This document shows, piece by piece, positions 54,301 through 60,300 of a stretch of 64,000 nt of DNA. The stretch is from Aplysia californica (Eukaryota), in assembly GCF_000002075.1 (NCBI RefSeq), contig NW_004797747.1:359085-423084 (forward strand), given 5' to 3'. The notes beneath the pieces were generated by a model. That model saw only the letters and a program-made list of their open reading frames with translations, was not told the DNA's origin and searched no databases. A program made the translations under genes and the position numbers. How positions within the stretch are numbered: the stretch's first letter is position 1; every line of letters begins with the position of its first letter.

Positions 54301-57300
54301 GTAGGTACAACTGCATTTTTTTTCTTTCTCCTGTAAAATTTTGCTTTCTGGGCTTTGTACATTTTAACAGCTTCCCTACATTATAGGCATTATAGGATTG
54401 GTCCCAAACAGACACCTTTTGACACTTTAACACTTTGCTGCTCCTTTCGCCGTCGGTCGGCGATGTTTACACCTAGTTTCTTTGGATTTTCCCCAAAAAA
54501 CCTTTGCCTTTGATGGCAAGAGTTTTTACTTTATATGAGCCTTGTTATGGCAAAGTGTTAAGCTCACCAAAGTCAGCACTTTTTGTTGGTGATGTGACTC
54601 CATTTTTATGAACACGGACTAAGTTCAATGTCATATATGTGAATTGCAATATGGTAGAACCCTGATGGTTAACCTTGATTTCTTGAATAGGATTGAAATG
54701 TCTAGGTGTTGATACTGTAATTTAGTCGAGCAAGGTAAGAATAGAAACTTTTCCTTTTGCTGGTTTGGCGCAAACAACTATTTTTTTAACTCTCAAAAGT
54801 CAGAGCAGTCAATATGTTGTGGAGCTGCCTATATGTGCAGACTGAAATAAGGAAATTCCATTACTGTTTGATTTTTTAAATGAGATTTCAACTAAAAAAT
54901 AGCAACTTTTTCAGGGACTAATGATGGAAGTGAAAATCTGATAATTTTTAGCTCATCAGGCGAGAGTAACTACCTTTTCAAATTAAGCTGTTACAACTGT
55001 GTGCTAAGAACTGGAAAAGACTGTTCCTGAATTGACTGAATCATTAAGGATGTTGGTGATGATTTCAATGAAACTTTCAAGGAAGGAGACTTGCAAAGGT
55101 GTTGGGATGGGTTAATGAAACTTTCAAGGCGTTGGGATGGGTTAATAGTGGCACGACTTCGTTGCAGATGACCATTTGACATAGTTAGCTGTGACCCTTG
55201 TAGACTGTGTGAGGGCAACTGTGGTTTACTGGTGTTATATAAAAAAGGCCCTGATTTTATGGTCTAACATGTAAGTTCTTCAAATTGTCATGTTTGTATA
55301 ATTGATTATTCACTGTCTGTAAAAATTGCTGAGGTGGCAATTAAGTTGTCTTGATTATTTCATCAGGAGGTTATTCCGACACTAGTACACTCTTCAAACA
55401 AAAGCTAACAACCATCCGTATAAAATTTGACAGCCCCTAGCACTGAAAATCCTCCCCCACCCCACCACTGCACACAGACTGAGAATAGGTAAAATGTAAA
55501 ATTTCCAGATGGATTTTTTTGTGATGGTAGTTTATCAGTAGATGTAAAAACAAAGTTTTTTAGAGCCTGAATTTTAAGACCTTTTGGGGGGGGGGGGGGA
55601 TTAAGTAGCCAGGATATTGTTTTTTGGTTGTTGTTGTTGTTGTTGTTTTGTATTTTGGTAAGTGTTTTACGGTGCTTGCAATTGCCTAAGGTCATATGAG
55701 CTAGCGGGGGACACATCAAACATTTTCAGTTGGTAGGAAATTTTGAATTTTGCCCCGGTGGCGGCCGAACCCTTTTCTTATCGACTTTGGACCATCAGGG
55801 GATCTTTAACGTGCGCAACTTGCACACGTGACCTCCTGAGTTTTTTTGCCCTTGTTTGAGAAGGCTAGGTGTAGATCTTACCTACCAGAAGATCAGGGGT
55901 GTGGCTGAAAGACAGCAGTAAGAAGGAGCCAAGGAGAAGCAGTAGAAAGGCTGCAGAAAGAGATAAGAGGGTATTGTTGGAAACGAAGGAAAATGATGAT
56001 GGCAGTTTGATTGTTTGTCTTAAAAAATGTTTTTAATTCTAGCAGAGAAATAATGTTAAGGACGCTTTTTAGTAGATTCAGAAATATTGAAACACTGGAT
56101 GGTTTATTAATTCTAAGTTGTCACCGTGTAAAAGCCCCTTTGGTGATGGAATGCTGTCAAATTGTGTAGCGTCCAAATAATGCTGTTTGTTTTTTTCCCA
56201 CTTATATTATCAGGGCGAAAAGAAAAATTTTACCGATGTCATCAGAGCAAATATTGGAGACTGCCATGCCACTGGACAAGAGCCACTCACATTCTTAAGA
56301 CAGGTGAACAGATTTTTTTTCCACCTATTTACATTATAGGTCTACACCATATTTTTCTTGGCTTGTCTAAATAGTCAAACAGAAATATAAAGTCTTTCCT
56401 TCAGACTCCATTTGGCATGTTAGTTTTTTGGGTGTCAGCTATCCGTGGCGGACAGAATTATTTCTGTTTATACTGTGTGATGGTCGTCAAATCATATTTT
56501 CTAATGATGTGAATTTTGTTTCTGTAGCACTTTGCAGTGAGTTGCAACCAATTAGTGAATTGTGTTCCTAGGTAAAAATGGTTCAAATGCAATTGATTAC
56601 ACATTCAAGAGCCTTAGACCAGACAGTCACTGAACACACAAATGAACTTTGTCGAGTGTGTGGGCGTTTAAATTTAACTGTCAAACGAAAAAAAAAGGTT
56701 ACAGAAAGCTCCAATTTTGTAAGACAATGGAGATATTGTCTTGATTTATGGGACTGATGTGAGGGACGAAGATAAACAGTCGTATTCCGCTAACATTTGT
56801 GTCAAGTGTTTTACAGCGATTTCAACGATCAGAAGTAGACAGAGTGTTACGTCAATACAAGCTGAAAAAAAAAGCTGTTGAAGCTAGTAGTAATATACAT
56901 GGTGTGCCTTTAACAATAACATCAATGTGAATTCCTGCTCCGTTTGTCGGCATCACTTGAGTCTTGTTGGTGGCTGCATACAAAGAAAACCTGCACCTCC
57001 AGAGCTGAGCTGCTCACATCATACACATCACACACATTCTATAGTCCAGTTATAAAGGATGACACATCAACAAGTCTTATTGCCAGCCCGACACCAAGTA
57101 GCATTTTGAAGAAACAAGTCTTGACCTATTAGCACATCCTGTCACCTAATCAACACTTATGAAAATTTCAAGGTCGTATACACTCACACAACAGATACAT
57201 CAAAATCTCTGATGTCCAAACATGAACTTACATTCACTCGCTCACTAAACAGGCCAGAAGATCAACCTCTAACGAAAGAAGAGGCGAAACTAAACTACTC

Positions 57301-60300
57301 ACATATTGAATCAAAATAAAGTTGTAAAGCTGACAGCAAAGGGAGAGCCATTAATGGAAAATACTTGCGCCACAGATAGAGACATTATGACATCTAAAGT
57401 CAGGACACCAACAAAACGCAAACAAGTACACATTTTATAAGACACCAGAGAACACATAGTGGGCACATACAAACAATCAGATGACATACAAATGGCCTCA
57501 GAATTGAAGAGAATACCCTCTATTTGGAGACATGCAATTTTTTAGAGGCGCTGGGATTAAACAGAAATCGGTGCCGTATATTGATAGGAGAATACAGATT
57601 CAATTGGAACATACAAAAAGCCATGTTCCCTGTACCGCTGCAGACAAAATTTTGAGTGAGTCAATTTTCTAACTCATTTTCCTGTCTTATGTACCGGTTT
57701 TGTAAATATTTATCAGCAAGTTAATAAGTTATTAGCCACTGAAGTAGGTGTTTGTTGTTTCGACCTACTCTGAATAGACGTACATTTTAAGAGCATCTAT
57801 TTCCAGAACGAGAGCAGCAACGATATTGATTCTTTGTACCAACAAAAAGAAGTCTAGTTTCTTTCTGTAAAGAACAAACTTGTGTGTACATACGATATTA
57901 TTTGTTTGTGTAAACCAATAAAACATGGGTCGTAAACTCTTTATAACATTTGCCTTCGCTGGTAGCGTGAGGTGGGGTGTGTGACCCGGTCACTCCATTG
58001 CCGAGCCAACTAAAAGAATGGTGTTTGTACGCCATGTTGTGTAGCTCAGAAACGACTACCATAATTTTGGAGCAGGTGTTACATTTGTATATCTCTGTTA
58101 TCAGGTAGTTGGGATTTGTGCCTACCCCAAGCTGTTTGAGGACCCCAGTCTCCCTGAAGATGCCAAACAGAGAGCTGACAGGATTCTGAACTCTTGTGGG
58201 GGAAGGAGCCTGGGTAAACTCTGAACACAATGTTTTGCTTCAACGACATTCCTTCACTGTTCAAATAAACTCAGTTATGCCTTATGAGAAATAGTGTTGG
58301 TTATGCAGAAATAGCTTCTCTGCCACTAGAATTTGTAATGAAAAGTATATTGCAATATATGAAGTGCCTTTAATCAGACCTACCCAACTTTCATTGAATG
58401 AAAATTAATACTGCTACATTATTATCTCACTATTGACCATTAAACATGAACACCTAAAAATTTGTTTAACCCTATCCGTACGCCCTGGGGTCATTTTGTA
58501 CCCCCGGGGTTGTATTCTTCACATTTTAGAATACTTCTAGTACGAAGATCTCTTTGAAGCTTTCAGTATTTCTAAAAAATTAATCATTTTGACAGACTGC
58601 TATGCAAAGCGTACCGATCGGATTAACGAGTAAATTTCCTGTTTGGAAAGTGGTGGCACAGAATTCCCCACGTCGTATGGATACGATAATAAAACACGAT
58701 GTACGGATAGTGTTAAAGAACACCTGTTCTCATGTATCCTCTCTTGTAGGACTGATGTGCCTTATGAATAATGGATTAGATTGTTTAATGTCCATTCCTT
58801 GTGAACAATTAGCTGGTGTAGACTCTACTGTTTGTGTGCTTTTGTTTTTTTGTTGTTTTTTTTCAATTTGCAGTGTTCAGCATCTGGCGCCATAAGTATA
58901 TATCATAACATGGTGACCAAGGAAAACGTGCTTTACTCGTAAAGAAAACAAAGTTTTTCGTGATTATTGAGGAGCTGATTGTCACACCAGTGTACTAAGA
59001 TAGATTCTTTTCCTAACATTGCCAGGCTCTTACAGTGACAGTGCTGGCCTGACTGTGGTAAGAGAAGACATAGCACAGTACATCACAGAGAGAGATGGGA
59101 TCCCAGCAGACCCTGCCAACATCTTCCTGTCTACTGGAGCCAGTGAAGCTATCAGGGTAAAAGAGTAAAAAAAAAAAAAAAGAATAATAATTTTAAGCAG
59201 TAGATTTAATTCCAGTATTGGCAAACCTCTTTTCTGATCAAGGAGTTAACAAAGAAATTGCAAAGAGCCCGGGGTTTCATGGAAAAAAAACCCAAAGGCG
59301 ACCCTTTAACTCCAGGACAAAGTACTTAGTTTGGTAATAATTAGAAAAATAGATGCCACAGAATTTTAGAAAATGAATTGAAACACAGGTAGATTGAAGA
59401 GTCGTGGGCAAAAACAATTGTGCTGAATTATAAATCTGTCAATAGCATTGCTCGTGTTTGCTTTTTTTAACCCTGCAAGTATGGCTATACAAATAGCCTG
59501 TGGTTTCAGGAAAAATTTAATGATTCATTGGGAAATGCTTGAGAACAGGTAAACTTGACCATAAACCTACACATTTTAAGGAATTAAATCGTAAATAGAG
59601 AGTAGGGCTCATTTGTGAAGGAGTTGGAATTGTTTGATGTAGTAAAAAAAACCTGATTAATGAACCAAAATTGTGATGCAAATAACAGCTGATTAAATCA
59701 GCTGCGACACCTCAGAACAGTAGGAGAGGTAATGAATTACCCATTGTCAGTTTCATATGAATGCCATTCCAATGACCATCCACTATTCAGTTTTTCTGTG
59801 GATTTAATGACTTGTTGGTAAAAAATTAAAAAGGAATGTGGCCCACAAATGCTTTTGTACAAACACAGTGCCTAAAGCCACTTATTCAGCTATCTAATTT
59901 CTTTATTTTGCTCCACAATTGTTGTAACTCATTTGCTGATCAATTCTTTTTCCTTTCTGCAGAATGTCATGAAGCTTTTGATGACAACTCTTGAAGGCAA
60001 TGATAAATCAGGAGTGATGATTCCCATTCCACAATACCCTCTGTACACAGCCACCATTGCTGAATATAATGCAGAGCCTGTAAGGACTTTCTTCACTCTA
60101 TAGTTATTTATGGTATCCACTTGGTGTACATGTCCAGTGCATTTTCATGATATTGCTGTTGTCACATGGTTCCTCTAACATGTCGCAGTCTACTCCCTAA
60201 TTTTTCCTCTTTTTTTTTTTACCCATTGCTTTCATTTTGCTGCTCTCCAAGGTTTAAAATAATTATTTCCTAAAATACTTTTGTTGGATTCGTAAACAAG

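What the first reader, a model, noticed from the sequence alone, without database searches (positions are those of the whole stretch)
56578..57545. Fossil RAG1-N-terminus-like transposase hidden in GPT intron 2
Seen: frames absent from the ORF track read H-SRALD-[QTVTEHTN]-EL-CRVCG, then [20 protein letters not shown], then W-x11-CSVC-x8-G. About 300 bp later come [27 protein letters not shown]. Knowledge: this order matches the zinc-binding region shared by the RAG1 non-core N-terminus, Chapaev transposases (Chapa motif) and the molluscan N-RAG-TP elements. From memory, RAG1 has HQANLRHLCRICG ... [20 protein letters not shown] ... W..H..SCDIC, and the middle block aligns without gaps. Inference: 'YS' (TAT TCC) is two C>T transitions from the conserved 'HP', and removing 24 nt restores H-x7-C. 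This looks like an internally deleted, decayed copy of a RAG1-related transposon family. No RAG1 core, RAG2 or RSS-like termini are visible here.
Basis: partly seen in the sequence, partly recalled or inferred. Interest (0 to 1): 0.8.

Follow-up and report, generated by a model that had tools for sequence, protein, structure and literature searches.

The report
Dead Chapaev transposon copy, RAG1-like finger
This is an old, broken, non-coding copy of a Chapaev-type (N-RAG-TP-like) DNA transposon. It sits in an intron of a sea-slug alanine aminotransferase gene, and the family's RAG1-like zinc finger was already described in what is very probably this same species, so the copy itself is ordinary.

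Summary
They belong to window 56460-58036 (+), one degraded copy of a multi-copy cut-and-paste transposon.

- **Family structure.** Full-length relatives are 3.8-4.1 kb. They have CAC...GTG ends, 4-bp target duplications and one ~940-aa transposase.
[quoted passage not shown] 27 of 100 homologues match Pfam RAG1_imp_bd.
- **Catalytic part.** Its predicted fold matches the RAG1 core first (Foldseek E 9e-13), then BbRAGL and Transib.
- **Window copy.** It lacks about 395 bp at the 5' end and about 1.74 kb holding the catalytic domain. It has many stops and frameshifts and lies about 17-20% (K2P) from every other copy.
The main reading, a decayed and internally deleted RAG1-N-like transposon, is right. 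Three details are wrong:
  - "YS" is inherited, because intact relatives have it too.
  - The "24-nt" repair is an out-of-frame coincidence. The real lesion is a 13-nt insertion, plus loss of the start codon and both N-terminal His codons.
  - A 3' end is present at 58008-58036.
- **Novelty.** The family type (Chapaev / N-RAG-TP in Aplysia) is published, so this is not new.
- **Side observation.** Three families have asymmetric ends, with a heptamer, then a spacer of about 22-23 or 13-14 nt, then TTTAGTT.

The parts
56460..58036 (+). Whole surviving copy of the Chapaev-type transposon. It is 5'-truncated and internally deleted.
   Evidence: Window 56460-57568 aligns to L031 3463-4601 at 79% identity. 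Window 57560/57647-58036 aligns to L031 6342/6464-6875 at 75%. The full element is L031:3068-6875. K2P distance is 0.165-0.21 to all other copies.
56592..57013 (+). Remains of the N-terminal two-zinc (Chapa / RAG1-NZD-like) domain, now spread over three frames with stops. CRVCG (56650-56664), CVKC, W and CSVC..G are kept. The start codon and both N-terminal His codons are lost.
   Evidence: tblastn of natural relatives gives HSPs at 56614-56697 and 56729-57013. One search gives E 2.8e-13. DNA alignment with 12 copies is.
56620..56632 (+). 13-nt insertion private to this copy, which shifts the frame.
   Evidence: All 12 other aligned copies lack it. The exact borders are ambiguous by a few bases.
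57234..57542 (+). Remains of the linker region between the zinc domain and the catalytic core.
   Evidence: tblastn to L031 ORF2 and to L036 residues 249-359.
57560..57568 (+). Junction of the internal deletion. About 1.74 kb is missing (L031 ~4602-6341), which is nearly the whole catalytic ORF.
58008..58036 (+). 3' end of the element. Read on the reverse strand it is CATGGCG + 13 nt + CTTTTAGTT. The family consensus end is ...GTACGCCGTG.
   Evidence: Sharp loss of similarity to all copies at 58036.
58108..58221 (+). Host exon (alanine aminotransferase), 71 bp downstream of the element and on the same strand.
   Evidence: phmmer against PDB sequences hits 3ihj_A, alanine aminotransferase 2, residues 89-124, E 2e-10. 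The frame is shown.

Best explanation
Window 56460-58036 is a dead, non-autonomous relic of a Chapaev-type (CMC/Transib-related) cut-and-paste DNA transposon. It inserted in sense orientation into an intron of an alanine aminotransferase gene of what is very probably Aplysia californica.

The family's intact transposase (about 940 aa) has three parts in order:
- a basic linker;
- a DDE catalytic domain with the RAG1/Transib fold.

Elements end in CAC...GTG and make 4-bp target duplications.

The window copy later lost about 395 bp at its 5' end, including that terminal repeat, and about 1.74 kb holding the catalytic domain. It also lost its start codon and acquired frameshifts and many stops. 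It can neither encode a protein nor, lacking one end, be mobilised.

Shown: copy structure, family ends and duplications, domain homology and decay. Inferred: species identity, the cut-and-paste mechanism (from family membership) and the absence of any present function.
For: - **Repeat family.** At least 40 DNA copies were scored. At least 150 N-terminal-domain matches and 87 catalytic-domain matches occur in the genome.
- **Ends and duplications.** The ends are CACGGCG...CGCCGTG. Identical 4-bp flanks were found in more than 20 elements of three families.
- **Full-length and intact copies.** L031:3068-6875 is a full-length copy with TSD CTTA. L036 and L034 carry intact 938/937-aa ORFs.
- **N-terminal domain.** Invariant residues are H3, C16, C19, C66, C69, W99, C111 and C114. 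The family profile's best PDB sequence hit is the mouse RAG1 NZD 21wb_A, at E 5.9e-6 with the domain profile and 1.6e-6 with the full-length profile. Full-length RAG1 residues 98-490 follow at E 4.5e-4, and ZAD scores only 0.025. Of 100 homologues, 27 hit Pfam RAG1_imp_bd (best 1.4e-10) and 32 hit zf-AD. The 2026 NZD preprint (10.64898/2026.01.24.700457) reports the same dual resemblance.
- **Catalytic part.** The AF2 model has pLDDT 91.4. Foldseek places the RAG1 core first (E 9.4e-13, TM 0.60), then BbRAGL (5.9e-10), HzTransib (5e-7) and Hermes (0.23). The Chapaev motifs C(2)C, LH and H(4)H and the D/D/E columns are conserved (hallmarks from PMC4079192).
- **Decay of the window copy.**
- **Host exon.**
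- **Species.** The nearest homologues come from sea slugs.
Against: - The window peptides alone give no Pfam hit.
- The closest intact N-terminal domain scores below Pfam's curated cut-offs for both RAG1_imp_bd and zf-AD.
- The structural library did not contain the RAG1 NZD structure. The fold searches therefore returned only weak ZAD matches (Foldseek E 0.47; VIA Z 4.2), so there is no direct structural confirmation for the N-terminal domain.
- I could not compare the family with the Repbase Chapaev-1/2/3_ACa or GenBank N-RAG-TP sequences, so identity with a named family is inferred.
- Sequence searches do not detect the RAG1 core. Only the predicted fold does.
- The TSD of the window copy cannot be checked because its 5' end is missing.
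Confidence: 0.93

Rival explanations
1. The zinc-binding peptides are the remains of an unrelated ZAD-type (zinc-finger-associated domain) gene or pseudogene, not of a RAG1-N-like transposase.
For: Pfam zf-AD scores about as well as RAG1_imp_bd on single sequences (32 against 27 of 100 members). The only solved folds resembling the model are ZAD domains.
Against: - The domain is the N-terminus of a ~940-aa transposase inside elements with terminal repeats and 4-bp duplications.
- No C2H2 zinc-finger arrays follow it.
- It has a second metal site (H3, H8, C111, C114) that ZAD lacks.
- The family profile ranks RAG1 NZD first at E 1.6e-6, against 0.025 for ZAD.
- The resemblance of one half of the RAG1 domain to ZAD is itself published (10.64898/2026.01.24.700457).
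Confidence: 0.03
2. It is a fossil of a true RAG-like (RAGL/ProtoRAG or TransibSU) transposon, the direct RAG1-RAG2 lineage, rather than of a Chapaev-type element.
For: The family protein has a RAG1-like domain order and its catalytic fold matches the RAG1 core best. The ends start with CAC and are asymmetric.
Against: - Elements are 3.8-4.1 kb with a single ORF, so there is no room for a RAG2-like gene.
- The target duplication is 4 bp, not 5.
- Identity to the RAG1 core is about 13% and invisible to HMMER.
- The catalytic domain carries the Chapaev C(2)C, LH and H(4)H motifs (PMC4079192).
- Pfam DUF1280 matches but the RAG1 core family does not.
Confidence: 0.03
3. The fragment has been co-opted by the host gene, for example as an alternative exon, a regulatory element or a source of small RNA, and is not merely junk.
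For: It lies in sense orientation only 71 bp upstream of a coding exon.
Against: There is no open frame, and stops occur in all frames. Its divergence from every other copy is about as high as, or higher than, that between subfamilies, as expected for neutral decay. No test of expression was made.
Confidence: 0.02

Closest known systems
Chapaev transposons of Aplysia californica (Repbase Chapaev-1/2/3_ACa) and N-RAG-TP (Panchin & Moroz 2008)
   Same: - Very probably the same host species.
- CAC...GTG ends and a 4-bp target duplication.
- A single-ORF transposase with an N-terminal RAG1-like zinc domain.
- C(2)C, LH and H(4)H motifs.
   Different: Identity with a particular named family could not be checked, because the sequences and the 2008 paper were not available here. 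The window copy is a truncated, deleted fossil, not a coding element.
[quoted passage not shown]
   Same: - The order of ligands is the same: His, then CxxC, then the block idV..D....H/Y-S/P...CxxC, then W and a final CxxC.
- It is the best sequence hit in the PDB (E 1.6e-6).
- Many homologues pass Pfam RAG1_imp_bd.
   Different: - The family lacks the vertebrate insertion between the first CxxC and the middle block.
- It is not followed by a RING finger in this family.
- In the window copy both N-terminal His codons are gone.
- In this lineage a conserved His is Tyr.
RAG1 core / BbRAGL / HzTransib catalytic domain
   Same: The predicted fold of the family's catalytic part matches these, and only these, in the PDB (E 9e-13 to 5e-7, TM about 0.6).
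   Different: - Identity is about 11-14%, with no sequence-level hit.
- The duplication is 4 bp, not 5.
- There is no RAG2-like partner.
- None of this domain survives in the window.
ZAD (zinc-finger-associated domain) of insect C2H2 proteins
   Same: The middle of the domain (model residues 14-84) resembles ZAD in sequence and fold at a weak level.
   Different: ZAD binds one zinc, dimerises and precedes C2H2 arrays. This domain has two sites and heads a transposase.

Membership tests
Chapaev (CMC) DNA transposons | Terminal inverted repeats ending 5'-CAC ... GTG-3' (PMC4079192) | tested here: met
   The family ends are CACGGCG.../...CGCCGTG and CACAGCG.../...CGCTGTG. The window keeps only the 3' end, mutated to ...GCCATG at 58036. 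Its 5' end is missing.
Chapaev (CMC) DNA transposons | 3-4 bp target site duplication | tested here: met
   Identical 4-bp flanks were found in more than 20 elements of three families. This is not testable for the window copy itself, which is 5'-truncated.
Chapaev (CMC) DNA transposons | DDE transposase with C(2)C, LH and H(4)H motifs | tested here: met
   Alignments A3 and A4 show invariant or nearly invariant D481, D552, E882/E886, C571-x2-C574, L638-H639 and H860-x4-H865 in L036 numbering. The domain is deleted from the window copy.
Chapaev (CMC) DNA transposons | N-terminal Chapa domain (RAG1-NZD-like zinc finger) | tested here: met
   The window remnant is recognised at E 2.8e-13.
Chapaev3 subgroup | 3-bp TWA target duplication, inserted between A and T (PMC4079192) | tested here: not met
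   Duplications are 4 bp and of varied sequence, for example CACA, AGCA, GACC, CTAC, CCTT and GTGG. The family fits the Chapaev group proper, not Chapaev3.
N-RAG-TP (Panchin & Moroz 2008) | Aplysia californica element encoding a protein similar to the RAG1 N-terminal region | tested here: inconclusive
   RAG1-N similarity is shown. The species is inferred from the assembly size. The published sequence and paper were not available, so identity is untested.
RAG-like (RAGL/ProtoRAG/TransibSU) transposons | Linked RAG2-like gene, 5-bp target duplication and a RAG1 core detectable by sequence | tested here: not met
   Elements have a single ORF and are 3.8-4.1 kb. The duplication is 4 bp. No HMMER hit to the RAG1 core was found. 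Only fold-level similarity exists.
ZAD-containing zinc-finger proteins | Single-zinc ZAD at the N-terminus of a C2H2 zinc-finger array | tested here: not met
   Scores are below the Pfam cut-off (21-22 bits against 28). No C2H2 domains occur in the 938-aa protein. Extra conserved ligands are present.

The most novel reading that the evidence does not exclude
The Aplysia Chapaev-type families may obey a 12/23-like rule. In three families whose zinc domains are only about 40% identical, the ORF-side end reads heptamer CAC(A/G)GCG, then about 22-23 nt, then a TTTAGTT-type 9-mer. The far end reads the same heptamer, then about 13-14 nt, then the same 9-mer.

The transposase linker carries a conserved KT.GGQP motif. 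HMMER places it opposite the GGRP motif at about residue 390 of RAG1, at the N-terminal edge of the RAG1 core, where from memory the nonamer-binding domain begins.

If this spacing is functional and not yet described, the asymmetric heptamer-spacer-nonamer logic of V(D)J signals would predate the split between the RAG/Transib and Chapaev lineages. The window copy contributes only a short-spacer end at 58008-58036.
Probability: 0.25. Interest if true: 0.7.

Novelty: already known. Interest (0 to 1): 0.25.

Why it matters
As a locus it matters little. It is one neutral relic among hundreds of copies, and the link between Aplysia transposons, the Chapa domain and the RAG1 N-terminus has been in the literature since 2007-2008. 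That link was revisited structurally in 2026.

The follow-up has some value at the family level. This genome holds apparently intact ~940-aa transposases with a RAG1-like order of modules: a zinc domain, a basic linker and a RAG1-fold core. They sit between asymmetric bipartite ends. This makes the family a convenient invertebrate system for asking how old the RAG1 N-terminal domain and the unequal-spacer signal architecture are.

Tried and rejected
- **Pfam on the seven window peptides** gave nothing useful. There was one chance Sec10_N hit at E 0.018.
- **phmmer of the intact 938-aa relative against PDB sequences** gave no RAG1 hit. Only profiles reached it.
- **Word-based protein search with the N-terminal 140 residues** found two metagenome-type entries only.
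- **The exhaustive profile search** returned 1251 hits, but only the top 150 are listed and all are close family members. It could not show whether RAG1 is among the rest.
- **Fold searches of the N-terminal model** (Foldseek PDB and VIA wide) did not include the RAG1 NZD structure and gave only weak ZAD rows.
- **A simple 16-nt inverted copy of the 3' end** searched upstream found nothing. The 5' end was instead found by comparing copies.
- **The candidate 5' end at window ~56444** (CGTGGCGGACAGAA) was rejected. It matches 10 of 14 positions only, has no matching duplication, and the homologous 395 bp are absent from the whole window.
- **The Panchin & Moroz paper** is not held.
- **The bacterial-type promoter/terminator scan** was uninformative.
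- **Read mapping and run search** were not used.
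Full report
**Observation**

The quoted peptides are present on the + strand in three frames between 56578 and 57545. Taken one at a time they match nothing in Pfam.

The DNA, however, is a repeat. A search of the window's own assembly with 56400-58080 returned 71 matches, from 40 of 132 candidates scored. Most copies share window 56458-56986 (78-82% identity) and 57622-58040 (72-76%). 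A few also share the middle.

**Anatomy of the family**

- **3' end.** Comparing copies with their flanks shows that similarity stops sharply at window 58036, at ...GTACGCCGTG in the family and ...GCCATG in the window.
- **5' end.** In other copies it lies about 400 bp upstream of the point where the window copy begins, and reads CACGGCGTCCGAAA....
- **Target duplication.** Each complete copy is flanked by an identical 4-bp duplication of varied sequence.
- **Full-length copy.** L031:3068-6875 on contig C19 is 3808 bp with TSD CTTA. It carries three overlapping ORFs of 145, 278 and 514 aa, which together make one transposase gene broken by two frameshifts.
- **Abundant derivative.** A 2051-bp form is an internal-deletion derivative. 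Its copies differ from each other by only K2P 0.033.
- **Intact relatives.** A related family has intact ORFs of 938 and 937 aa (L036, L034). In the C880 copy they lie between CACAGCG...CGCTGTG ends with TSD ATTC.

**The window copy**

- Window 56460-57568 corresponds to L031 3463-4601.
- Window 57560-58036 corresponds to L031 6342-6875.
- The first ~395 bp, including the 5' terminal repeat, are absent from the whole window.
- About 1.74 kb (L031 ~4602-6341), nearly all of the 514-aa catalytic ORF, is deleted.
- Upstream, 55963-56457 is single-copy intron sequence. 55800-55962 is an unrelated young repeat.
- Downstream, 58037-58107 is single-copy. 58108-58221 is an exon matching human alanine aminotransferase 2 residues 89-124 at E 2e-10.

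So the host-gene assignment is right and the element lies in sense orientation in an intron. I did not verify the intron number.

The copy is 0.165-0.21 (K2P) from every other copy, which indicates a long private branch and an old insertion. In the ancestral frames there are multiple stops and at least two private frameshifts.

A DNA alignment with 12 other copies gives four results:
- The family start codon ATG is ATT in the window (56592-56594).
- His3 (CAC) is TAC.
- His8 (CAT in L056 and most copies) is CTT.
- A 13-nt insertion private to the window lies at about 56620-56632.

The "H-x7-C after removing 24 nt" is therefore a coincidence.

The "YS" is not decay of "HP" in this copy. L056 and L031 (the same lineage, with an open domain) have YS, L036 (intact 938-aa ORF) has YS, and L038 has FS. 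Most other families have HS, and one (L091) has HP. Ser at the second position is nearly invariant. A His-to-Tyr change did happen, but deep in the lineage and in coding elements.

**Is the N-terminal domain RAG1-like?**

Seventeen natural N-terminal domains from this genome were aligned (A1). They share invariant H3, C16, C19, G20, C66, C69, W99, C111, C114 and G123, and nearly invariant H8 and C38.

| Test | Result |
|---|---|
| Profile of 41 full-length proteins from many animals (A4) against PDB sequences | 21wb_A E 1.6e-6; full-length RAG1 residues 98-490 E 4.5e-4; a ZAD domain E 0.025 |
| 100 homologous N-termini from the exhaustive search (1251 hits), scanned against Pfam | 27 match RAG1_imp_bd (best E 1.4e-10); 32 match zf-AD (best 4.7e-7) |
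| Catalytic-domain homologues from other molluscs | Some carry precomputed PF12560, and one a RING finger |

This double resemblance is what a 2026 preprint reports. It solved the RAG1 NZD structure, finds Chapaev "Chapa" domains to be the only consistent relatives, and notes that one half (ZFa) resembles ZAD (10.64898/2026.01.24.700457).

My AF2 model of the closest intact domain is confident (pLDDT above 85 over residues 1-122). The fold libraries lacked 21WB and returned only weak ZAD rows. The homology therefore rests on sequence profiles, not on a structural comparison.

**The rest of the protein**

- Pfam sees only DUF1280.
- The alignments show the Chapaev hallmarks C(2)C, LH and H(4)H around conserved D, D and E columns (hallmarks quoted from PMC4079192).
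- An AF2 model of L036 residues 400-938 (pLDDT 91.4) matches the RAG1 core as the best structure in the PDB (4wwx_E, E 9.4e-13, TM 0.60). BbRAGL (5.9e-10) and HzTransib (5e-7) follow, then there is a gap to Hermes at E 0.23.

This agrees with the published placement of Chapaev next to Transib/RAG1 (PMC4411706). None of this domain survives in the window, and the elements are too short for a RAG2-like gene.

**Identity of the genome and of the family**

The assembly has 927,310,431 bases in 4332 contigs. AplCal3.0 of Aplysia californica is listed at 927.3 Mb (PMC8861042). The nearest foreign homologues are from sea slugs.

N-RAG-TP, a transposon with a RAG1-N-like protein, was described from this species in 2008 (cited in PMC8355894 and PMC8374863). 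Repbase holds Chapaev1-3_ACa (PMC4079192, PMC4411706). I could not obtain those sequences, so equivalence with a named family is inferred.

The 4-bp duplications of varied sequence place the family in Chapaev proper. They do not fit the Chapaev3 subgroup, which makes TWA duplications.

**Side observation on the ends**

This was prompted by an earlier first-reader note on another piece of this genome. I looked for elements bounded by identical 4-bp flanks and measured the distance from the terminus to a shared TTTAGTT-type motif.

| Family | Loci | ORF-side end | Far end |
|---|---|---|---|
| A | L004/L056, L010-L029 | 38 nt | 28-29 nt |
| B | L049, L053, L054 | 39 nt | 29 nt |
| C | L064, L069 | 39 nt | 30 nt |

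The spacer sequences differ between families and the longer spacing is always on the ORF side. With a 7-nt terminal motif and a 9-nt inner motif, the spacers are about 22-23 nt and about 13-14 nt. The window keeps only the short-spacer end (58008-58036).

The family linker has a conserved KT.GGQP motif. HMMER aligns it to the GGRP motif at about residue 390 of RAG1, at the N-terminal edge of the RAG1 core. From memory this is where the nonamer-binding domain starts. The alignment has low confidence in that region.

No paper in the searchable library combines Chapaev with heptamer, nonamer and spacer. The 2007-2008 Repbase reports and the N-RAG-TP paper are not searchable here, so I make no claim of novelty.

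**Verdict**

The thing is a known kind in, very probably, the species where it was first reported. As a locus it is ordinary.

Noticed in passing
L010-L029, L004/L056, L049, L053, L054, L064, L069 (element ends); window 58008-58036: Three divergent Chapaev-type families have asymmetric bipartite ends. The motif CAC(A/G)GCG is followed by a TTTAGTT-type motif that ends 38-39 nt from the ORF-side terminus but 28-30 nt from the far terminus. This implies spacers of about 22-23 nt and 13-14 nt, which recalls 12/23 recombination signals.
   Followed up: partly
L034/L045 (C880) and L036/L044 (C379): Two copies about 99% identical, each about 4.1 kb, carry intact 937/938-aa ORFs. The C880 copy has complete CACAGCG...CGCTGTG ends and TSD ATTC, which suggests recent activity of this family in the genome.
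   Followed up: partly
window 55800-55962: A separate short repeat of about 162 bp with very many copies at 92-95% identity (2471 first-look candidates). It is probably a young SINE- or MITE-like element and is unrelated to the finding.
   Followed up: no
L036 residues ~285-360; window 57306-57440: The conserved linker motif KT.GGQP...PRK...R is aligned by HMMER to the GGRP motif at about residue 390 of RAG1, near the start of the RAG1 core, at low confidence. It may be a nonamer-binding-domain-like module.
   Followed up: partly
L036 residues 364-524 and homologues: Pfam DUF1280, a family of uncharacterised nematode proteins by my recollection, matches the region just before and at the start of the catalytic domain (E 1e-10 to 1e-17). 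DUF1280 proteins are therefore probably Chapaev-transposase derivatives.
   Followed up: no
P0008, P0039, P0046, P0075, P0085, P0094: Several sea-slug homologues of this transposase are named "amine oxidase" in public records. This looks like annotation error or a fusion artefact.
   Followed up: no
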